A stretch of 44,041 nt of DNA, from positions 102,998,450-103,042,490 of the forward strand of contig NC_068981.1 of assembly GCF_001194135.2 (NCBI RefSeq), given 5' to 3'. Source of the DNA: Octopus bimaculoides. Its lineage: Eukaryota. Below the pieces are notes generated by a model, which saw only the letters and a program-made list of their open reading frames with translations, was not told the DNA's origin and ran no database searches. The stretch's first letter is position 1. Every line of letters begins with the position of its first letter. Shown here piece by piece: positions 1,307-41,908 of the stretch. Position numbers and translations under genes: made by a program.

Positions 1307-2370
1307 GAAACCCTTGCTGAAATACATCAAAAGTTTCATTAGAGACGATCTAGACATGCTTGAGCACCTACTAAAAACAACTAACGAAGAGACATTATTG
1401 GTTTTCTTCGATGTTATTCATCTTTACACTAACATTCCACATGGCTATGGAATAGAAGCAATAAAATTCTGGCTGGAAAAGTATCCTGAAGCAATTCCGG
1501 AACGCATAAACCAGGTTTTTGTGACCAGGCACCTACTATCGTCAAAAATGCGGAATTGCGATGGCAACGAAAGCAGCCCCTATTCTTGCGAACGAATAAT
1601 GAGATATTTTGAATTCATCATATATAAAGTATCACTGCAAAAATATGTAAATCCATTTCTCCATTATAGAAGGAAGAACTGGAAAAGATGCATGGATGAC
1701 TGCTTTGTCATTTGGAAAGAAACCATTGATAAACTTTTGGAATTTAAATCAATACTAAATAATATAAACCCTAACAATCAATTTGCAATGGAATATAACA
1801 AAGAACAGATCCCTTTATTGGATATTATGATAAAAAAAAGTCAACAACCAAATTATAACTGACATTTATCCTAAACCAACGGACTCGAAGCAGTATTTCC
1901 TATTTCGCTCATGCCACCCGAAGCACATCAAGAGAAATATCCCCTTTAATTTAGCAAAAAGGATTTGTACAATAGTGTTTGATGAAAATACTCGGGACCT
2001 TCGTCTTCAAGACCTCAGAACAATACTAACTGAAAGACAATACCCACCCTCACTTATAGATGATGGGATTAAGCGTGCTAAGAAATTAGGCATTAAAACA
2101 CTAGGGGTAACGAAATGTGACACCCCACCTCATCTCAAAATACTACCGTATATATATGAACTCACAATCCTAGAAACAATGAGGCATGCAACACTACTGT
2201 TCACGATCTAACATTTTGAAAACATAAATTCATCAAATGCAAAAGTCTTTGAAAAGACTTCTAACAAAAGCGAAGATTACACAACAACTACGAAACCAAT
2301 GGTTGAAAAATGTGGACGCCCAAACTGTGAAACATGCTCCAAACTTCTGAAATGCTCGGAATTAACCAGC
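1307..2370 (+). mobile_element. Decayed Penelope-like retroelement: RT, thumb and Cys-rich linker; GIY-YIG domain missing
   Basis: Motifs FDVIHLYTNIP, GIAMATKAAP (alternative frame), WKRCMDDCFVIW, IPLLDIMI, DIYPKPTDSKQY..SCHPKHIKRNIPFNLAKRICTIV, and CGRPNCETC near 2310-2340. Frameshifts and stops are present. Confidence 0.93.
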
Positions 2371-5542: not shown

Positions 5543-6984
5543 ATTCCCTCTGCTGTGCACAGATTGCATTCTTTTGATTTGTTTGTTTGTGGTTTTGGTA
5601 TTCTTTTTATCAGCTAAGGTAAATGCATCAAATAAACCACTCCAGTTGATTATGCAGATGTGAAGAATCTTGGGCATTAGCTTAAGCATGTCACATAGAA
5701 TCAAGCTGATGTCAACTCAAACACACGAAAACTGATGTCCGGCAAAAATGTTTCATTGGTATGAGCAAAGGCGGATTCAAAAAAAGAATAATTGGATACA
5801 CATAATTTCGATTTGCAGCTGACTGACAACCACGATTGAATGACAAGCACGATAGATCGTGCGGCAAAAATATTTTCTGATATTTAATGCCTGTTACATT
5901 TTCAGGTTCAAATTCCGCCGAGGTCAGCTTTGCTCTCCGAGTCGATTTCTCATAGCAGATAGAACTAGGCGAGCTGGGCCGGGTGTGGAGAGCTAGTAGT
6001 TGAAAATGAAGCGGGCTAATCGGTTTTAAACTTTACAGCCACAGTAAAGGAAGAAGAATTAAATAGGTTCGAGTTATTTCGTCTACTCATTAGTAAAGAT
6101 ATGTGGACTCTACCTCTAAAAATTTACCGTTACTGTTGTGGGAATGAGTCTGGTCTTTGTCAATTTTAGCATGACTGATTTAATTCAGTTACACTGGTGC
6201 CTCAGCTTTCTTCAAGTAACAAACTATAGCTGAGTATCCCGAACGTATCTTCCATGTGCTTCTTAACTGGTTCTTTTAAAACAATGCTGAAGAAAACTAA
6301 CGAGAGCTACAGCAACGGAACTTAAATTCATAGAGTCAGGAAGTACTGTATATTAGCTACCACTTTCACATTTCGTACGCAAAACTCCCAAAGACTAACT
6401 ATGGCATTAATAATAACTATGGCTAATGTTGCACGCATATGTTCTTCTTTAGTCTGGAGTGGAGCTTTGGATACTATTTCTAACAGGTGAAGCAACTGTG
6501 TGTAGAGGCTCCTTTCATTTGCTTGAAACGAACACTATTTTTACTCTCCGTATCCAGCCAGTGATTGAAAGGAGGTAAACAGAGGAATAAGACATAATTT
6601 TCCAACAGTGTAACACAAAGACCTAGTTTCCAGTAATGCGTCAGTGCTCTTCTAATCATAACAGATTGGCACGTTATTAGCTTCGGTTAGATTCTCTGAT
6701 CCAAGGCATGTGTTTTACAACGTCTTAATACTTAATTTAAAAGACACTATATTGGGTGACTTCTTTAATGAATAATAGGGGCCGATATCTCATGGAATTT
6801 AAATTATCAGCACTAGATCTAGCTGCAAGGCTTACTTCTTTTTCAGGGGAGAAAAACCGACACTAATTACTTCGTTCTGAATAGGAGTCACTTGGGAAAT
6901 ATACTTGCCTGTTGTTTTTGTTGTTATTATGCATACATACACACACATACGCACACACATTGTGTGTGTGTATGTGTGTGTGTG

Positions 6985-7032
<48 letters not shown>

Positions 7033-7095
7033 AGATGTACACACACACACACACACACACACACGTATATATATATATGTACGTACATATATACA

Positions 7096-10832: not shown

Positions 10833-11075
10833 GGGCATATGGCGTAGTGCTTAAGATCGCGGATTACTAACCCCAAGATTCCGAGTTCGATTCCAAGCAA
10901 TGACCTGAACAATAATAATAATAATAATGATGATGATAATAATATAACATCGAAAAACACCTTAGGAATGAGAACCCAGGTTCGAAATTTCCCCAAGACA
11001 CCTGAAGATGGCTGGAGGGTATATCAGCTGAAACGTTGTGTTAACAAAGAAGATGAGGACATATATCGGTCTAAT
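10833..11075 (+). mobile_element. tRNA-derived SINE whose 3' tail carries a Penelope-type hammerhead ribozyme
   Basis: A-box-like TGGCGTAGTGCTTAAG (10840-10855), anticodon-loop-like TTACTAA, B box GAGTTCGATTCC (10883-10894), an internal (AAT)n, then the HHR at 10997-11042 in the same orientation. Confidence 0.8.
10997..11042 (+). ncRNA. Minimal type-I hammerhead ribozyme (PLE-type, palindromic stem III)
   Basis: Stem I GACAC/GTGTT; core CTGAAGA (11002-11008) plus 1 nt; stem II GGCTG/CAGCT with a 10-nt loop; GAAA (11030-11033); palindromic ACGT; GUU triplet (11035-11037). Confidence 0.8.
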
Positions 11076-11109
11076 GTAAATAATTATTATTGTTGTTGTT
11101 ATTGTTATT

Positions 11110-16737: not shown

Positions 16738-17634
16738 CTAACATTTAAACATAGATTGTAAGTTCTTTTTACAGAACATGCTTATGATCGGGAAATTGCG
16801 ACTTAACGTTCTTTAAATTCTTTTGAAACAGCAGTTATTGCGCTGTTCATCAATTTTTCATTTTTTAAATCGTTGCAACAAATACTTTATAACTGCAGTT
16901 TAAATATCACTTATCGATTCGGATTTTGACTTCCGTTTTCTTAAATTTCTACCCATCATTATCTATTAAAATATATAAACATAGCAGGTGCCGTGTTGAA
17001 AATTTTAACCTCTACATAAATTTGAACAATTAGTTTCAAAGCACTTCAGGTTATTAAAAGTGAATTATTAATTAAGTTCAAACGTAACATCACAATATGG
17101 TTGCTAGGAAATACAAACATAACCTTTAATAAGTATCGCAATTAAGAACAATATATGCAAATATAATAACTATTATGAGACAGAGGGAATAGAATAAATG
17201 TTAGCGAGAAGAAACCAGAAGCTGAAATTAGAGGAGATAAGGACATGAAAAGGAGAATACTCTAATAAGTGGTGATAAATGAGCGAAAATCAAATATGTT
17301 TATGTCACGATGTGCGACGATACCTTGTTTATGACAGCCATTAGCATTGTTGTTGTTTAGCAATAAATCAGTTGTGATCAAGCAGACTTATAAACAAAGG
17401 CTTTTCATCCACGATTTTCAGATCATTTTGAGCATCTTGGATTCCATTGATCAATGTGTCCTTTCTTTAAGATGATAGAGTATGTGAACTGAAGGAGACT
17501 TGATTGCATTTCTAGCGGATCATGTAGCCTTGTCGAGGGATCTTTGTTAACTCATTGATATCTTATTACCGAATAATTAAGTACTTTTTACACGTTATTG
17601 AATTCCCTGCTTCATCTATATCAACTCATTTTTA

Positions 17635-17655
17635 TATACATATGTATATACGTAT

Positions 17656-17701
<46 letters not shown>

Positions 17702-17713
17702 GTGTGTATATAC

Positions 17714-17783
<70 letters not shown>

Positions 17784-17889
17784 GTATATACATATATACA
17801 TACATATATATATATATATACATATATATATACATATATACATGTATGTATACATATATATATATATACATCTATACACACACATACAT

Positions 17890-17934
<45 letters not shown>

Positions 17935-20760: not shown

Positions 20761-20997
20761 GAACCAGCGATGTCACCTTGAACGTTGTCCTTCGAAAGTC
20801 AATAGATCGTTGCCGCTTCTTCAAATCGCATCCTTCCATCATAACGTGTGTTGAGGACGCATTAGCTAAAGTAATCGTAGACACTCCACAAAACACTACG
20901 TCTATCTGGGGAAAAAATACAGATACCAACCTACCAAACAATAAATATGATAGTCACAGCTGGAACGCCTTTTATTCTAGATCTACTCAACCGGGGT

Positions 20998-21307
20998 GGA
21001 GGCGCAATGGCCCAGTGGTTCGCGCAGCGAACTTTCAGTCGTAGGATCGCGGTTTCGATTCCCAGACCGGGCGTTGTGAGTGTTTATTGAGCGAAAACAC
21101 CTAAAGCTCCACGAGGCTCCGGCAGGGGATGGTGGCAAACCCTGCTACACTCTTCCACCACAACTTTCTCTCACTCTTACTTCCTGTTTCTGTTGCGCCT
21201 GTAATTCAAAGGGCCAGCCTTGTCACACTGTGTCACGCTGAATATCCCCGAGAACTACGTTAAGGGTACACGTGTCTGTGGAGTGCTCAGCCACTTGCAC
21301 GTTAATT
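20998..21307 (+). mobile_element. tRNA-derived SINE, family C (3' end runs into a gap)
   Basis: A box TGGCCCAGTGGTT and B box GGTTTCGATTCCC; the tail aligns with family D. Confidence 0.88.
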
Positions 21308-22605: not shown

Positions 22606-23465
22606 GGCGGCGAGCAGGCAGACATGTTAGCACGCCGGTATTTTGTCTGTCTTTACGTTCTGAGTTCAAATTTTGCCGCGGTCGATTTTGCCTTTCATCC
22701 TTTCGAGGTCGATAAAATAAGTACCAGTTACGCACTGGGGTCGATATAATCGACTTAATCCGTTTGTCTGTCCTTGTTTGTCCCCTCTGTGTGTAGCCCC
22801 TTGTGGGCAGTAAAGAAATAACAAACTTATTAAATAAAGAAATTGGTATTTCGTCTGTCTTCACATTCTGAGTTCTAATTTTGCCGCGGTCGATTTTGCT
22901 TTTCATCCTTTCGGGGTCGATAAATTAAGTACCAGTTACGCACTGGGGTCGATATAGTCAACTTAATCCCTTTGNNNNNNNNNNCGCACTGGGGTCGATA
23001 TAATCGACTTAATCCGTTTGTCTGTCCTTGTTTGTCCCCTCTGTGTGTAGCCCCTTGTGGGCAGTAAAGAAATAACAAACTTATTAAATAAAGAAATTGG
23101 TATTTCGTCTGTCTTCACATTCTGAGTTCTAATTTTGCCGCGGTCGATTTTGCTTTTCATCCTTTCGGGGTCGATAAATTAAGTACCAGTTACGCACTGG
23201 GGTCGATATAGTCAACTTAATCCCTTTGTCTATCCTTGCTTGTCCCCTCTATGTTTAGCCCCTTGTGGGCAATAAAGAAATAAGAAACGTTAGCACGCCG
23301 GGAAAAATGCTTAGCAGTATTTCGTTTGCCGTTACGCTCTGAGTTCAAATTCCGCCGAGATTGACTTTGCCTTTCATCCTTTCGGGGTCGATAAATTAAG
23401 TACCAGTTGCGACTGGTCCCCTCTCCAAACATTTCGGGCTTTGTTCCTAAAGTAGAAAAAAATTA
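22606..23465 (+). mobile_element. Head-to-tail array of family A SINEs (three real units plus a probable assembly duplication)
   Basis: Repeated TTCTGAGTTC..GGTCGATAAA.TAAGTACCAGTT blocks. 22731-22974 is identical to 22985-23228 across a 10-N gap. Confidence 0.9.
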
Positions 23466-24184: not shown

Positions 24185-24348
24185 TCCCACACCGTCACAA
24201 TTCTCCAACCTTGGGCAAGTGTCTTCTACAATAGCCTCGAGCCGACCAAAGCCTTGTGAGTGGATTTGGTAGACGGAAACTAAAAGAAGCCAATCGTATA
24301 TATGTGTGTATATATATATGTGTGTGTCTGTGTGTGATTGTGTGTGAG

Positions 24349-24397
<49 letters not shown>

Positions 24398-24652
24398 TTG
24401 TGTGTGTATGTGTGTGTGTTTGTGTTTGCACCCCACCCTGCATCAACTGACAACCAGTGCTGGTGTGTTTACATCCCTTTAATTTAGCAGTTCGACAAAC
24501 AATACCGATAGAATAAATAGTAGGCTTACAAAGAATAAGTCCTGGGCTCGATTTCTTTGACTAAAAACTCTTTAAAGCAGTGCTCCGGCATGGCCGCAAT
24601 CAAATGACTGAAACAAGTCGAAGAATAAAAGAATAAAAGAATAAAAGAATAA
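24185..24652 (+). mobile_element. tRNA-derived SINE, family B, 5'-truncated, with internal (TG)n expansion and (GAATAAAA)n tail
   Basis: CCTTGGGCAAGTGTCTTCTAC..GTGAGTGGATTTGGTAGACGGAAAC..GCATGGCCGC..ACTGAAACAAG. Confidence 0.9.
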
Positions 24653-26394: not shown

Positions 26395-26714
26395 TAGGGG
26401 CAGGAGTGGCAGTGTGATAAGTAGCTTGCTATCCAACCACATGGCTCTGGGTTCAGTCCTACTGCGTAGCACCTGGGGCCCACCAAAGCCATGTGAGTGG
26501 ATTTGGTAGACGGAAGCTGAAAGAGGCCCGTCGTGTATATATATATGTGTGTGTGAGTGTGTGTGTGTGCGTGTTTGGGTATCTCTGTTTGCCCCCCCCC
26601 CCACCGTCGCTTGACAACCGAATCTGCTATGTTTACGTCCCCATAACTTAGCGGTTTGGCCTAAGAGGTCGATAGAATAAGTACTAGGATTACAAAGAAT
26701 GAGTCCTGGGGTCG
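26395..26714 (+). mobile_element. tRNA-derived SINE, family B (3' end runs into a gap)
   Basis: GGCAGGAGTGGCAGTGTGATAAGTAG head, GGGTTCAGTCC B box and family B body. Confidence 0.9.
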
Positions 26715-34433: not shown

Positions 34434-34466
<33 letters not shown>

Positions 34467-34968
34467 ATATGTATGTATATATGTATGTATGTATGCATAT
34501 ATCCATATACGAGAAAGGTGGAAAAAGTCGACCTTGAAGACAGGGTCAAAGCGGTGGCTAGAAAATCGAAAATAAATGTAAGAATAAAACAAAGACGCAC
34601 ATCGGTGTAGGGAGGGACAAATGCCGAGTGGATGGGGTGGATCGGTTTTTATATTGTTTATAATGTGTACAGAATCCCATTTGGTGAACAGAGAGCAGAC
34701 TCTTCTTACAAAAGCAATGCACATCAATTATTTGGCCAGTGGTCTGGAAGTAGACACTATCCGTCAGGCTCTTGCATGCATGTATGTATGTATGCATGTA
34801 TGTATCTACGTATGTTTATTTTTATGTACGTACGGATGTACATATTTATGCGTATACGGTTATATATATGTATATATGCACAAGCTCACAGACATACATA
34901 CATATATACATATAATATGTATATACTTACGTGCATACATACGCGCATGCATAATACATACATAACAG

Positions 34969-35925: not shown

Positions 35926-36930
35926 TTAGTATTTAGTTGACATTCCCTTTCCAGTTTTTAGTTCAGAAACTCTTTTTGGCATTGAACTGATGAGCTTTGT
36001 GATTGTCTCTTGTGGAATTTCTGCCCACTTTTCACGCAACAATCGAAGCCATTCATCTTTAGATTTAGGTTTTTGTTGAGTTTTTTTTGTATAGCTCTAC
36101 CTAGTACGCTCCAAAGATTTTCAGTCGGGTTAATGTCAGGGGATTGTCTGGGCCAAGGAAGCTTTTTGATTCCATTTTCAGTCAGCCATTGTTGATTCCT
36201 TTTCGCTGTGGCATGGAGCCCTATCTTCTATGAATAAAAACTCATTTTTCCTTATTTTATCGTATGTATACATCGGAAGTAGTTCTTGTTTAAGTATTTC
36301 GATGTATTTTTCAGAATTTATGGTTCCAACACATTCGATCAGCTCTGAACGACCATTGCTGGTGACAGCTCCCCATACCATTACAGAGATACCGCCATGT
36401 TTCACAGTTGGTTGGAATCGTTTCAAATCAAATTCTTGATTGAGAAACCTCCAGACCCAAACACGTCCACTGTCTAAAAATAATGCAAATTTGGATTCAT
36501 CTGAGAAAATCACTCTATCCCAAAATGAACTGAATTTTTCTGACATCTCTTTAGCCCATTTCTTTCTTTTCATGATATTAATTGGTTAAAGGAGAGGTTT
36601 TCTTCTCGCTGCTCGTCCATAATACCCAAGATTATGCTGATATGTAACACACGGTCTTGGACTGACTTCTAGGTGATTTGCAATATCAGAAGCCTTTGAA
36701 CAGGGTTCGTTTTCCACGATCCTCTTCAAACAGTGAAGCTTCCTTTCCAAGGGCCCAGGTCGGCTGGGACGAGAATCTGTTGATTGTTTTCCTTGTCTTT
36801 TGAATTGCACTATAATTGTAATTAACAAAGCAAGAGGAATTTGAAGATTTTCGGCAATTTCTCGTTGGCTAAGACCAGCCTCAGATTGACCAACAATACG
36901 ACCTCTTTGAAAATTTGACTGCGTTGATCA
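35926..36930 (-). mobile_element. Decayed Tc1-like (DD34E) transposase, near complete coding region
   Basis: [23 protein letters not shown]; [11 protein letters not shown]; VIFSDESKF; PTVKHGGISVMVWG; EDRAPCH; WPRQSPDINPTENLW. The D-to-E spacing is 34 after correcting one frameshift. No TIR pair found. Confidence 0.95.
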
Positions 36931-37841: not shown

Positions 37842-38893
37842 ATATATACATGGTGCGAAGGATAAATTGTAGGCATTTTATATTTTTAATTTCACGCATG
37901 CACATTGTTTGCTTTTGATTTTTTCAACTACGCAGTATTGTAGGGTGAGTTGAGCACCGTCTGTGAGAAAAAGCATCAACATGATGCAATTCACTCTGCC
38001 AGAAATTTGGAAACAATATGCTGTAATGCTTGGTATTCGCGCCGGAAGCTCCAATGCGAACACTTCACAATGTTTGGGTGAGGACAGTACAAAGGATTCG
38101 GAAAGAGTTGAATGAATCTAATGGTGACTACGAAGGTACAGCAGCTCAGAAAACTCACTCTGATCGTTCTGATAAGGAAAAAACTCCTGAATTTGTTGTT
38201 AAGATTCAGGCCATTATTGACAACGATCCCTCCAAGTCAGTCAGATCTGTCGTCAGTGACATAGGAGTGTCTGCATGAAGACATTCAGTATTCATCATGC
38301 AAGATGAAAAAGGGCCGAATTTCATCCCAAGCCATCAAGGACAAGGTGAATGACCGCGCTACGAAGCTTTTCAACAAAGTCAAGCATCCCCTCCAACCGA
38401 CATCATGGTGTTAGGAGTGATCACTAGTGATAGTGACATTATGCCTCCAATTATCTTCCCACAGGGCCTCAGGCTCAACATGGGGGCCTACATCAAATGC
38501 TTGGAGAAGGTACTGCTGCCATGGGTCAAGAGGTTGGTTGCTGGAAGACTCTATGTCAGGAAACAGGACGCTGCACTATATCACACAAGCAGGAGAACCT
38601 AGCCATGGCTGTCAGACAATTTCTGCAACCACATTACTCTTAACATTTGGCTTCCTAACTCCTCACACTGCAACCCCCTTGATTATTATGTGTGGGGTGC
38701 AGTTCAGCGAGAGACCAACAAAACTCCTTGTAACACGAAAGATGAACTGAAGGCAAGGATTAAGGCAGCATTCACCAACTTAAACAAGGAGACCGTCCAG
38801 AAGAGTTACAGGAGATTTTGAAGTCATCAGGAGGCCATGGTGAAGCCGATGGCGATTTTATTGAATAGATTTACTCTTTAGTATTTCAAGATA

Positions 38894-39190
38894 GTAAAAC
38901 CAGTAGCTAGCAGACTATGGCTATCACTCTGGCGTACTCGCGACTGAGGATAAGCCAAATAGCTCGAAACTGAGTCAGTCTCGCGATCCTAATACCTGCT
39001 AGATAGTTCGCTCCCCCTTCTAACAATATCTTGTATATAAAGGGTGCGAGTCGCACCGAAAGCCAGCTGGCGGAGAATCTGCCTGCGGTTAAACTAGTAG
39101 TAACATTCAACAGCCACTTTGATGTGGCGACTGGCTTTACTGTTTAGTATAGTTATTACTTTAGTCTCTCTGTGAGATTTTACAACTAGC
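38894..39190 (+). mobile_element. Retrozyme-like non-autonomous retroelement (297 bp, non-coding) with 12-bp TSD
   Basis: Interrupts the maT 3' region. Flanked by TATTTCAAGATA (38882-38893) and TATTTGAAGATA (39191-39202). Contains a type-I HHR and several hairpins. Confidence 0.8.
38934..38993 (+). ncRNA. Extended type-I hammerhead ribozyme (Sm-alpha1-like)
   Basis: GTAC, then stem I TCGCGA (38938-43)/TCGCGA (38981-86); core CTGAGGA (38944-50); stem II AGC/GCT with loop CAAATA; GAAA (38966-69); stem III ACTG/CAGT; GUC triplet (38978-80); then TCC. Confidence 0.88.
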
Positions 39191-39496
39191 TATTTGAAGA
39201 TATTTTTAAGTAACTGTGGTAAATATATCTGTTAAAATGTGATGGCAGTGTTAACATTTGTGCGTAATTTAGACAATTTATTCACGCACCCTATATATAT
39301 ATATATATATATATNNNNNNNNNNNNNNNNNNNNNNNNNNNNNNNNNNNNNNNNNNNNNNNNNNNNNNNNNNNNNNNNNNNNNNNNNNNNNNNNNNNNNN
39401 NNNNNNNNNNNNNNNNNNNNNNNNNNNNNNNNNNNNNNNNNNNNNNNNNNNNNNNNNNNNNNNNNNNNNNNNNNNNNNNNNNNNNNNNNNNNNNNN

Positions 39497-40996: not shown

Positions 40997-41402
40997 TTAC
41001 TCTTTACTCTTTTACTCTTTTACTTGCTTCAGTCATTTGATTGTGGCCATGCTGGAGCACCGCCTTTTAGTCGAGCTAGTCGACCCCAGGACTTATTCTT
41101 TGTAAGCCTAGTACTTATTCTATCGGTCTCTTTTAGCCGAACCGCTAAGTTACGGGGACGTAAACACACTAGCATCGGTTGTCAAGCGATGTTAGGGGGA
41201 CAAACACAGACACACAAAAACACATATATATACATATATACGACGGGCTTCTTTCAGTTTCCGTCTACCAAATCCACTCACAAGGCTTTGGTCGGCCCGA
41301 GGCTATAGTAGAAGACACTTGCCCAAGGTGCCATGCAATGGGACTGAACCCGGAACCATGTAGTTGGTAAGCAAGCTACTTACCAAACAGCCACTCCTAC
41401 AC
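40997..41402 (-). mobile_element. tRNA-derived SINE, family B, full length and best preserved copy
   Basis: Complete from the GGAGTGGCTG head and GGGTTCAGTCCC B box to the (GAGTAAAA)n tail. Confidence 0.95.
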
Positions 41403-41908
41403 CTAGTTGTGAAATATTCTTAAAAAATAAAGCACCCGACTGTCTTGCTAAAAGAAAACCTGATGGACAATAATACAGATCTAGATGCACATAAAAAAAT
41501 GAGATGGTCATAATTGGATTGCTTCTAATAATGGATAAGGTCAGTGAAGGAGTTAAATAGCAGCAGCAATAGCAATAATGTAGATTTACGATAGTTGATT
41601 ATAAGATTTTCCGTTTGAGACATGATGTGTTGATTAAATATCAAACTGATGATTACCGAGGATGGGTTGTTGTTAATTAGATCTTAATTAACTTCTTGTT
41701 TACTTTAGACGTGCTCTGCGTTTCGTTCGGTTTTGATCTCTGATTGTTATCAAATATCCTTTCCTGGATGTATACAACAACACTCTCGATTTAATTGGAA
41801 CAAAGTATCTTTATTTGTAAAATTAAGAGTCACAACATTTTTATCCATTAAACCAAAATAAAGGAAATGGCGGGATCAGAAGTGAAACTGATCGAAGCAT
41901 CGTTTCAG

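What the first reader, a model, noticed from the sequence alone, without database searches (positions are those of the whole stretch)
38882..39202. Retrozyme candidate: 297-bp non-coding insertion with a tertiary-stabilised type-I hammerhead and a 12-bp TSD
Seen: the insertion splits the maT transposon and is bounded by TATTT(C/G)AAGATA. It carries GTAC-TCGCGA-CTGAGGA-t-aAGC-CAAATA-GCTc-GAAA-CTGAGTCAG-TC-TCGCGA-TCC, giving a 6-bp stem I, a 4-bp stem III (part of the near-palindrome ACTGA-G-TCAGT, so it could also pair as a dimer) and a canonical GUC site. Established: the Schistosoma Sm-alpha1 hammerhead has the same CAAAUA loop II, the same GUAC located 6 nt before C3, and UCC after stem I; these form the loop-bulge tertiary contact needed at low Mg2+. 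Small HHR-bearing non-autonomous retroelements (retrozymes) that give circular RNAs are known from amphibians, schistosomes, crickets, corals and mussels. Inference: this is a monomeric genomic copy of a cephalopod retrozyme family, probably mobilised by PLEs. I do not know of one described from octopus. This copy has an extra U after A9 and an A-C mismatch at the base of stem II, so it may be weakened.
Basis: partly seen in the sequence, partly recalled or inferred. Interest (0 to 1): 0.88.

Follow-up and report, generated by a model that had tools for sequence, protein, structure and literature searches.

The report
Lone hammerhead-ribozyme retroelement in octopus transposon
A 297-base non-coding mobile element carrying a Schistosoma-type hammerhead ribozyme has jumped into an old octopus transposon; it is most likely a dead single copy of a known kind of element (an animal "retrozyme"), and no second copy or RNA evidence could be obtained here.

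Summary
Window 38894-39190 (297 bp) is a real insertion. Four related maT copies (O. vulgaris, three ENA contigs) run straight through the site with one TATTTCAAGAT(A/G); here it is duplicated 11/12. At 38934-38989 (+) lies a type-I hammerhead with an intact core, a 6-bp helix I and the GUAC / CAAAUA / UCC contact motif of the Schistosoma Sm1/N79 ribozyme. Chance expectation is about 4e-11 per genome.

Corrections:
- Rfam scores it only 23.1 bits (HH9 gathering 52).
- The "extra U after A9" is a documented natural feature, conserved in Penelope-element hammerheads.
- The clear lesion is the A-C pair at the base of helix II.
- Helix III is weak as a monomer (-1.2 kcal/mol) and strong as a dimer (-14.6), yet this locus has one ribozyme.

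The retrozyme label is only partly supported. Size, GC, lack of coding, TSD and ribozyme type fit. The tandem arrangement is not met. No second copy exists in about 170 kb of DNA examined (about 64 kb of it certainly octopus). It is a new member of a known kind, of modest interest.

The parts
38882..38893 (.). Left copy of the 12-bp target-site duplication, TATTTCAAGATA
   Evidence: It is present once in the empty sites of L002, L001, L013 and L015.
38894..39190 (+). 297-bp non-coding insertion (hammerhead-bearing retroelement copy). GC 45.1%, CpG o/e 0.86. No poly(A), no terminal inverted repeats, no tRNA-like head.
   Evidence: Its ORFs have no true homologue.
38934..38989 (+). Type-I hammerhead ribozyme motif including the helix-I bulge context (GUAC ... 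UCC)
   Evidence: Rfam HH9 at 23.1 bits, E = 0.0023, covering 38935-38989. Layout. Same geometry as the Sm1/N79 ribozyme and as the Rfam Hammerhead_1 consensus.
38938..38943 (+). Helix I, 5' strand UCGCGA (palindromic, pairs with 38981-38986)
38944..38950 (+). Core C3-A9: CUGAGGA (N7 = G)
38951..38951 (+). Unpaired U between A9 and position 10.1, a feature conserved in Penelope-element hammerheads
   Evidence: PMC4209133; PMC1636495
38952..38965 (+). Helix II (A-AGC / GCU-C) with loop 2 CAAAUA. A38952 opposite C38965 is the one clear lesion (A-C instead of G10.1-C11.1).
   Evidence: (non-canonical pair flagged)
38966..38980 (+). G12 A13 A14, helix III ACUG-AGU-CAGU (near-palindrome) and C17. 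Predicted cleavage is 3' of 38980.
   Evidence: Hairpin -1.2 kcal/mol against dimer duplex -14.6 kcal/mol.
38981..38986 (+). Helix I, 3' strand UCGCGA
39191..39202 (.). Right copy of the target-site duplication, TATTTGAAGATA (one C>G change)
37849..38881 (+). Host: 5' part of a degraded, internally deleted Tc1/mariner transposon of maT type (5' inverted repeat, transposase remnant with stops, stop codon about 15 nt before the insertion)
   Evidence: There are 37 residues between the 2nd and 3rd catalytic D in the translation.
39203..39293 (+). Host: 3' end of the same transposon with its terminal inverted repeat

Best explanation
The 297-bp segment is one retroposed copy of a small, non-coding, hammerhead-bearing non-autonomous retroelement. 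That kind is called an animal non-LTR retrozyme (Schistosoma Sm-alpha, newt satellite 2, and the coral, mussel and axolotl elements).

Shown:
- It entered the 3' untranslated end of an already old maT transposon, with a staggered cut that duplicated 12 bp.
- It carries a canonical type-I hammerhead with the helix-I bulge / loop-2 contact motif.
- It has no ORF with relatives, no poly(A) and no small-RNA head.

Inferred:
- The source was an RNA, probably a circle or multimer made by hammerhead self-cleavage and host ligation.
- That RNA was copied into the nick by the reverse transcriptase and GIY-YIG endonuclease of a Penelope-like element. This would explain the variable-length TSD and the intact ribozyme lying inside the insert rather than at its ends.

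This copy is probably inert, for three reasons. It has one ribozyme, so it cannot excise a unit. Helix III is only stable as a dimer with a second ribozyme. The G10.1-C11.1 pair is lost to an A-C mismatch.
For: - Insertion and TSD: four empty sites.
- Hammerhead: core intact; 6-bp helix I, 4-position helix II, CAAAUA loop, GUAC six nt before C3 and UCC after helix I, exactly as in Sm1/N79. Chance expectation 4e-11 per genome.
- Architecture: matches the 'canonical metazoan type-I' description (helix I 6 bp, helix II 4 bp, short palindromic helix III). It does not match Penelope minimal hammerheads (PMC4209133).
- Published criteria: 297 bp, GC 45%, TSD >4 bp and no coding fit PMC7229834. Monomeric derivatives are reported as common (preprint 10.64898/2026.07.22.740005).
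- Penelope-like elements: they give variable TSDs (PMC8557442). One degraded copy lies at window 1314-2370.
- Age: CpG o/e is 0.86 in the insert against 0.44 in the host, so the insert is younger than the host.
- Dimer mode: helix III hairpin -1.2 against dimer -14.6 kcal/mol.
Against: - No second copy was seen in the window, in 20 kb of O. vulgaris, or in about 106 kb of other fetched DNA (about 66 kb with maT copies, about 40 kb of unrelated metagenome contigs).
- Six-frame and ORF protein proxies found nothing real.
- There is no tandem arrangement, which is the feature used to define animal retrozymes.
- Terminal redundancy that would betray a circular template is weak (9/11 to 9/14).
- The Rfam score is far below gathering (23.1 against 52; under 34 for Hammerhead_1).
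- Whole-element folding is only mildly better than shuffles (z = -2.1 linear, -1.6 circular).
- The nearest-neighbour model does not favour the hammerhead fold.
- No expression or cleavage data exist.
Confidence: 0.6

Rival explanations
1. It is a heavily 5'-truncated Penelope-like element. Only the terminal pseudo-LTR or 3' end with its hammerhead was copied in by target-primed reverse transcription. On this reading it is not a separate non-autonomous family.
For: - Penelope-like elements are typically strongly 5'-truncated, give variable TSDs and carry hammerheads in their pLTRs.
- The unpaired nucleotide after A9 is a Penelope-hammerhead hallmark.
- A PLE RT-EN remnant and an abundant Penelope-type minimal-hammerhead repeat are present in this genome.
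- Retrozymes are reported to be sister to pLTRs.
Against: - Metazoan PLE hammerheads are described as minimal variants (helix I 4-5 bp, helix II 6-8 bp, no real helix III, no loop contacts).
- The example in this very window (11002-11042) has that form.
- The ribozyme at 38934-38989 has the canonical 6 / 4 / CAAAUA architecture.
- There is no similarity between the insert and the PLE fragment or the minimal-hammerhead repeat.
Confidence: 0.2
2. It is a SINE-like element with its own Pol III promoter (as proposed for Schistosoma Sm-alpha / Sj-alpha), mobilised by a LINE (RTE, CR1 or L2 type) rather than by a Penelope-like element and without a circular RNA stage.
For: - It has a defined unit length with the ribozyme about 40 nt from the 5' end and a 12-bp TSD.
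- The insert does not start or end at the cleavage site.
- Weak A-box-like (pos. 37) and B-box-like (pos. 112) matches exist.
- Animal retrozymes 'could be regarded as a novel family of SINEs' (PMC7761336).
Against: - The box matches have 2 mismatches each, roughly what chance would give by my own hand estimate (about 0.7 such matches expected in the element; not a tool output), and are 75 nt apart.
- There is no tRNA, 5S, 7SL or other small-RNA match.
- There is no poly(A) or simple-repeat tail.
Confidence: 0.1
3. It is a one-off event: a retro-copy or templated repair insertion of part of a cellular, non-mobile hammerhead-containing transcript, so there is no family.
For: No other copy was detected by any route available.
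Against: - The clean 12-bp TSD points to endonuclease-mediated integration.
- The sampled octopus DNA is only about 64 kb, so absence is uninformative.
- Isolated conserved animal hammerheads (HH9/HH10 type) are intronic and not known to be mobile.
Confidence: 0.06
4. The hammerhead resemblance is a chance or low-complexity artefact.
For: - It is below Rfam gathering.
- A loose CTGANGA...GAAA...TC pattern is at chance level in the window.
Against: - The full descriptor has an expected 4e-11 hits per genome.
- A stricter descriptor gave 0 hits in 30 shuffled windows.
- It agrees position by position with Sm1/N79.
Confidence: 0.01

Closest known systems
Animal non-LTR retrozymes (Cervera & de la Pena 2020, PMC7229834: coral, mussel and axolotl; earlier newt satellite 2 and cricket pDo500)
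   Same: - Non-coding unit of 170-400 bp
- GC below 45-50%
- Canonical type-I hammerhead with helix I / loop 2 contact
- Short palindromic helix III suited to dimer cleavage
- TSD longer than 4 bp
- Co-occurrence with Penelope-like elements
- Monomeric derivatives are known
   Different: - Here there is a single unit, not a tandem array.
- Copy number, circular RNA and activity are unknown.
- Helix II base pair 10.1-11.1 is broken.
- An unpaired U follows A9.
Schistosoma mansoni Sm-alpha / Sm1 hammerhead (N79 derivative, sequence in PMC12550524)
   Same: - GUAC six nt before C3
- 6-bp helix I
- Loop 2 CAAAUA
- 4-position helix II
- GUC site
- UCC directly after helix I
   Different: - No sequence similarity outside the ribozyme.
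- N7 = G rather than U.
- Helix II is AAGC/GCUC with an A-C mismatch rather than GUCC/GGAC.
- There is an extra U after A9.
- Helix III is a different 4-bp near-palindrome.
Minimal hammerheads of Penelope-like elements (Cervera & de la Pena 2014, PMC4209133; Lunse et al. 2017)
   Same: - Unpaired nucleotide between A9 and 10.1
- Palindromic helix III
- Dimer-dependent activity expected
- Dispersed single motifs from truncated copies
   Different: - Those have helix I of 4-5 bp, helix II of 6-8 bp, essentially no helix III and no loop-loop contact.
- The window's own example at 11002-11042 shows that form, unlike 38934-38989.
Rfam Hammerhead_HH9 (RF02275) and Hammerhead_1 (RF00163)
   Same: Best Rfam match. 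Core, helix I, loop 2 and helix III align.
   Different: It scores 23.1 bits against gathering scores of 52 (HH9) and 34 (Hammerhead_1). A bona fide tandem locus from a metagenome (L010) scores 56 and 51 bits.

Membership tests
Animal non-LTR retrozyme | Type-I hammerhead with complete catalytic core (C3 U4 G5 A6 N7 G8 A9, G12 A13 A14, A15.1-U16.1, H17) | tested here: met
   All core positions are present at 38944-38950, 38966-38969 and 38979-38980.
Animal non-LTR retrozyme | Canonical helix sizes and conserved helix I / loop 2 tertiary-contact nucleotides | tested here: met
   Helix I is 6 bp, loop 2 is CAAAUA, and GUAC and UCC flank helix I as in Sm1/N79. Helix II has 3 pairs plus an A-C mismatch.
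Animal non-LTR retrozyme | Head-to-tail tandem repeats (dimer or more), one hammerhead per unit | tested here: not met
   One unit and one hammerhead are flanked directly by the TSD. There is no other copy in the window. Monomer derivatives are, however, described.
Animal non-LTR retrozyme | Unit of about 170-400 bp, non-coding, GC below 45-50% | tested here: met
   297 bp; GC 45.1%. The longest ORF is 67 aa with no true homologue.
Animal non-LTR retrozyme | TSD longer than 4 bp when present; no LTR, PBS or PPT | tested here: met
   12-bp TSD (11/12), verified by four empty sites. No terminal direct repeats.
Animal non-LTR retrozyme | Multi-copy family in the genome with stem covariation | not testable with these tools
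   No octopus genome could be searched by DNA. About 64 kb of octopus DNA and about 106 kb of other fetched DNA (about 66 kb with maT copies, about 40 kb of unrelated metagenome contigs) hold no second copy. Pattern scans of viral and prokaryote collections were empty.
Animal non-LTR retrozyme | Expressed as linear and circular RNA of unit length | not testable with these tools
Animal non-LTR retrozyme | Self-cleavage of the hammerhead (monomer or dimer) | not testable with these tools
   Only thermodynamic hints are available. The hammerhead fold is -9.4 against an MFE of -13.3 kcal/mol; helix III is -1.2 as a hairpin against -14.6 as a dimer.
Rfam Hammerhead type I / HH9 (CL00010) | Covariance-model score at or above the gathering score | tested here: not met
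   No hit at gathering. HH9 scores 23.1 bits against 52. The Hammerhead_1 gathering score is 34.
Penelope-like element (truncated copy / pLTR) | Contiguity with, or similarity to, a PLE RT-EN unit or its pLTR | tested here: inconclusive
   There is no RT/EN next to the insert and no similarity to the PLE remnant at 1314-2370 or to the minimal-hammerhead repeat. No octopus PLE termini were available for comparison.
Penelope-like element (truncated copy / pLTR) | Minimal hammerhead architecture (long helix II, short helix I, no helix III) with an unpaired nt after A9 | tested here: not met
   The unpaired U is present, but the helix sizes are canonical (6 / 4 / 4 bp). Contrast window 11002-11042.
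SINE (Pol III, LINE-dependent) | tRNA / 5S / 7SL-derived head with A and B boxes; LINE-related or A-rich 3' tail | tested here: not met
   No tRNA and no small-RNA family match. The box matches have 2 mismatches each, roughly what chance would give by my own hand estimate (about 0.7 expected). There is no tail.
maT clade of Tc1/mariner (host element) | DD37D catalytic spacing, TA target, terminal inverted repeats | tested here: met
   37 residues lie between the D of 'KQDAAL' and the D of 'NPLDYY' in the translation. Inverted repeats and flanking TA are shown. Relatives carry DDE_3 PF13358. That DD37D defines maT rests on my own knowledge.

The most novel reading that the evidence does not exclude
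Octopus harbours a so far undescribed, possibly still active retrozyme family that makes about 300-nt circular RNAs. Its ribozyme combines the canonical Schistosoma-type tertiary contact with the unpaired nucleotide typical of Penelope-element hammerheads. That would make it an intermediate form linking retrozyme ribozymes to Penelope pLTR ribozymes.
Probability: 0.25. Interest if true: 0.5.

Novelty: new member of a known kind. Interest (0 to 1): 0.3.

Why it matters
If a family stands behind this copy, it would extend hammerhead-bearing retrozymes to cephalopods. Those genomes are famous for transposon expansions and heavy RNA processing.

It would also give a ribozyme with mixed canonical and Penelope-type traits. 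That bears on the current proposal that animal retrozymes derive from Penelope pLTRs.

As it stands, the locus is a clean example of a monomeric, probably dead insertion. It is useful as a seed for a genome-wide search but not surprising: type-I hammerheads are already known in molluscs and were counted in the giant squid genome.

Tried and rejected
I did not try to get round it, so there are no depth, copy-number or back-join data.
2. Protein proxies for other copies:
   - The 67-aa ORF and a six-frame concatenate of the element found nothing in 5.8 billion proteins.
   - The exhaustive 1.84-billion search gave one hit, P0051. I rejected it as spurious: a 9/22-residue similarity repeated ten times in a repetitive GC-rich protein.
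   - Exact look-ups of three window ORFs were not on record.
3. Pattern scans:
   - The family-specific 25-mer is absent from viral and prokaryotic contigs.
   - The generic Schistosoma-type pattern in JGI metagenomes gave true hammerheads (L010; L006/L007/L011), but they are unrelated outside the ribozyme.
4. ENA contigs with maT relatives: sample ERZ21867824 proved to be a distant animal sharing no other repeats with the window, so it was of little use for copy finding.
5. Whole-window Rfam scan at E-value threshold: it was swamped by microsatellite-derived microRNA false positives.
6. Terminal redundancy as a trace of a circular template: only 9/11 to 9/14 matches, not convincing.
7. Pol III boxes: matches with 2 mismatches each, roughly what chance would give by my own hand estimate.
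8. Nearest-neighbour folding neither supports nor excludes the hammerhead fold.
Full report
**1. The observation**

TATTTCAAGATA (38882-38893) and TATTTGAAGATA (39191-39202) bracket 297 bp (38894-39190).

The host is a degraded Tc1/mariner copy spanning about 37849-39293. Its features:
- Terminal inverted repeats and flanking TA.
- A transposase remnant full of stops.
- 37 residues between the second and third catalytic aspartates in that translation. This is the DD37D spacing that, to my knowledge, defines maT.

The transposase stop lies about 15 nt before the insertion point.

I fetched relatives of the transposase and the DNA around them. Four copies align straight across the junction once the 297 bp are removed: O. 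vulgaris OX597814.1 (L002), an ENA long-read contig (L001) and two Brazilian metagenome scaffolds (L013, L015). Each carries a single TATTTCAAGAT(A/G). The segment is therefore an insertion that duplicated 12 bp of target. The refutation criterion 'maT consensus copies already contain this segment' fails.

**2. The ribozyme**

Rfam finds nothing at gathering score in the whole window. With permissive thresholds on 38800-39300 the best match is Hammerhead_HH9 at 38935-38989 (+), 23.1 bits (gathering 52), E = 0.0023. The two helix-II closing positions are flagged as non-canonical.

The layout:

| Element | Sequence |
|---|---|
| 5' context | GUAC |
| Helix I, 5' strand | UCGCGA |
| Core C3-A9 | CUGAGGA |
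| Unpaired nt | U |
| Position 10.1 | A |
| Helix II / loop 2 / helix II | AGC - CAAAUA - GCU |
| Position 11.1 | C |
| Core G12-A14 | GAA |
| Helix III | ACUG - AGU - CAGU |
| Site | C17 (38980) |
| Helix I, 3' strand | UCGCGA |
| 3' context | UCC |

Every invariant core base is present.

The Sm1-derived N79 ribozyme printed in PMC12550524 reads GGTAC-ATCCAG-CTGATGA-GTCC-CAAATA-GGAC-GAAA-...-TC-CTGGAT-TCC. The Rfam Hammerhead_1 consensus has the same loop.

A descriptor of these fixed bases and stems is expected 4e-11 times in a 2.7-Gb genome of this composition. A somewhat looser descriptor gave no hit in 30 shuffled windows. The motif is a genuine hammerhead relative, not chance. The CM score alone would not show that.

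**3. Is it damaged?**

The first, the extra U after A9, is not a defect in itself. [quoted passage not shown] They note that it also occurs in some canonical ones (PMC4209133). The CChMVd (+) hammerhead carries an extra A there with only a moderate kinetic cost (PMC1636495).

The second, A38952 opposite C38965, does break the highly conserved G10.1-C11.1 pair. G10.1 is part of the A9/G10.1 metal site (PMC7151607). Without other copies this stays a prediction.

Helix III is marginal as a hairpin (-1.2 kcal/mol), but two copies would form a -14.6 kcal/mol duplex. This is the dimer mode typical of animal type-I hammerheads.

Nearest-neighbour folding does not favour the hammerhead fold for either the window copy or the A38952G variant. 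That is uninformative, because the core and tertiary contacts are not modelled.

**4. The rest of the element**

- GC is 45.1% against 36.7% for the window.
- CpG o/e is 0.86 against 0.44 in the host transposon. The insert is therefore younger than its host.
- The one mismatch in the TSD suggests it is not brand new.
- There is no poly(A), no simple-repeat tail and no terminal inverted repeat.
- There is no tRNA and no other RNA family match.
- A/B-box matches have 2 mismatches each, roughly what chance would give by my own hand estimate.
- The longest ORF, 67 aa on the minus strand, has no true relatives.
- Folding is only mildly better than shuffles (z = -2.1 linear, -1.6 circular, 56% paired).
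- The ribozyme lies 41-96 nt from the 5' end, so the template was not a self-cleaved linear monomer. It was an uncleaved or re-ligated (circular or multimeric) RNA, or an RNA with defined ends.

**5. The search for a family**

This was the decisive test and I could not complete it.
- No tool searches an octopus genome by DNA.
- There is no second copy in the window.
- There is none in 20 kb of O. vulgaris, which shares many other interspersed repeats with the window at 81-86%. The window is therefore from an Octopus species.
- There is none in about 106 kb of other fetched DNA: about 66 kb of contigs with maT copies and about 40 kb of unrelated metagenome contigs.
- Protein-level proxies and pattern scans were empty or spurious.

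The sample is far too small to bound the copy number usefully. A TSD-flanked insertion implies at least one source copy, but array structure, consensus and covariation remain unknown.

**6. Context**

The same window holds a degraded Penelope-like RT followed by the CxxC linker of its endonuclease, at 1314-2370.

It also holds a Penelope-type minimal hammerhead at 11002-11042. That motif has a 5-bp helix I, an unpaired nt after A9, a 6-bp helix II and only the palindromic CG as helix III.

The minimal hammerhead sits in a roughly 160-bp repeat. The repeat has three more copies in 20 kb of O. vulgaris and a relative in the distant ENA animal. So Penelope-type elements and their ribozymes are abundant here. 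They also look different from the ribozyme in the 297-bp insert.

For scale, a metagenome contig (L010) with a 511-515-bp tandem repeat has two Hammerhead_1 hits of 56 and 51 bits. That is what an intact retrozyme locus looks like.

**7. Comparison with the known**

Animal non-LTR retrozymes are defined as tandem units of 170-400 bp with low GC and canonical type-I hammerheads. Their TSDs are longer than 4 bp, and they are expressed as circular RNAs and thought to use Penelope-like elements (PMC7229834; PMC7761336).

A 2026 preprint adds two points. Monomer derivatives range from 0 to 100% of units, and retrozymes are sister to PLE pLTRs.

The insert meets the size, GC, coding, TSD and ribozyme-type criteria. 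It fails the tandem criterion, and the rest is untested.

The main rival is a 5'-truncated PLE, or solo pLTR. The canonical ribozyme architecture argues against it, but it cannot be excluded. A Pol III SINE reading has no positive support.

I found no paper on octopus hammerheads or retrozymes in the held library. The giant squid genome paper does report 235 Hammerhead_1 loci.

**8. Verdict**

Best reading (0.6): a monomeric, probably inert copy of a hammerhead-bearing, Penelope-dependent non-autonomous retroelement. It is a new member of a known kind, of modest interest (0.3).

Noticed in passing
window 10927-11085 (hammerhead 10997-11042, + strand); L002 16401-16559, 18481-18658, 19470-19560; L001 12473-12513: A roughly 160-bp interspersed repeat carries a Penelope-type minimal hammerhead (CUGAAGA + unpaired nt + 6-bp helix II + GAAACGU). 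It has one copy in the window, three in 20 kb of O. vulgaris and a relative in a distant animal. Rfam does not see it. A GGTTCGAA B-box-like motif lies about 25 nt upstream.
   Followed up: partly
window 1314-2370 (+), probably continuing about 2830-2960: A degraded Penelope-like element. It shows an RT fragment (weak RVT_1, FDVIHLYTNIPH motif), a thumb-like KPTDSKQY...SCHPKH stretch and the CxxC linker of the GIY-YIG endonuclease. It is interrupted by another repeat at about 2380-2830.
   Followed up: partly
window 38863-38884 vs 39129-39150: The flank just upstream of the insertion (GAATAGATTTACTCTTTAGTAT) resembles a stretch 40 nt before the insert's 3' end (GACTGGCTTTACTGTTTAGTAT) at 18/22. 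I estimate about a 0.1 chance by a hand calculation. It could be microhomology used during integration or a coincidence.
   Followed up: partly
window 37849-38893 vs 38894-39190: CpG observed/expected is 0.44 in the host transposon but 0.86 in the insert (window 0.78). The insert has escaped, or not yet undergone, the CpG decay seen in its host.
   Followed up: no
L006 668-702, L007 1788-1822, L011 1007-1041 (JGI/GenBank metagenome contigs): Identical Schistosoma-type hammerheads have a U-U at the base of helix II, a zero-loop palindromic helix III (ACGCGU) and a GUA site. In L007 the ribozyme lies between AACCCT telomere-like arrays, reminiscent of telomere-attached EN-deficient Penelope elements or Terminons.
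   Followed up: partly
L010 115-159 and 630-674: Two near-perfect Hammerhead_1 ribozymes (51 and 56 bits) lie 515 nt apart in a 511-515-bp direct repeat on a 1.1-kb metagenome contig. This is an apparent tandem retrozyme from an unidentified animal.
   Followed up: partly
window 36178-36828 (-): A second, unrelated Tc1/mariner transposase remnant (DDE_3, E = 4.6e-4) lies about 1 kb upstream of the maT copy.
   Followed up: no
window 41003-41418, 22637-23417, 24208-24638, 26395-26714, 20996-21307: SINE-like repeats of about 300-340 bp are shared at 72-86% with many places in the O. vulgaris locus L002. These families are far more abundant than the hammerhead insert.
   Followed up: no
window-wide (e.g. 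6973-7055, 17629-17907, 34445-34513): TA/CA-rich microsatellites produce dozens of sub-threshold Rfam 'microRNA' matches (mir-297, mir-466, mir-3149). These are false positives to be ignored. Twelve N-gaps are all flanked by such repeats.
   Followed up: no
P0051: A 2096-aa repetitive, GC-rich predicted protein ends in a GIY-YIG-like motif (VIYALFDD...VAYVGQT). It matched the element's ORF only through a 9/22-residue similarity repeated ten times. The E-value of 3e-18 is an artefact of repetition.
   Followed up: yes
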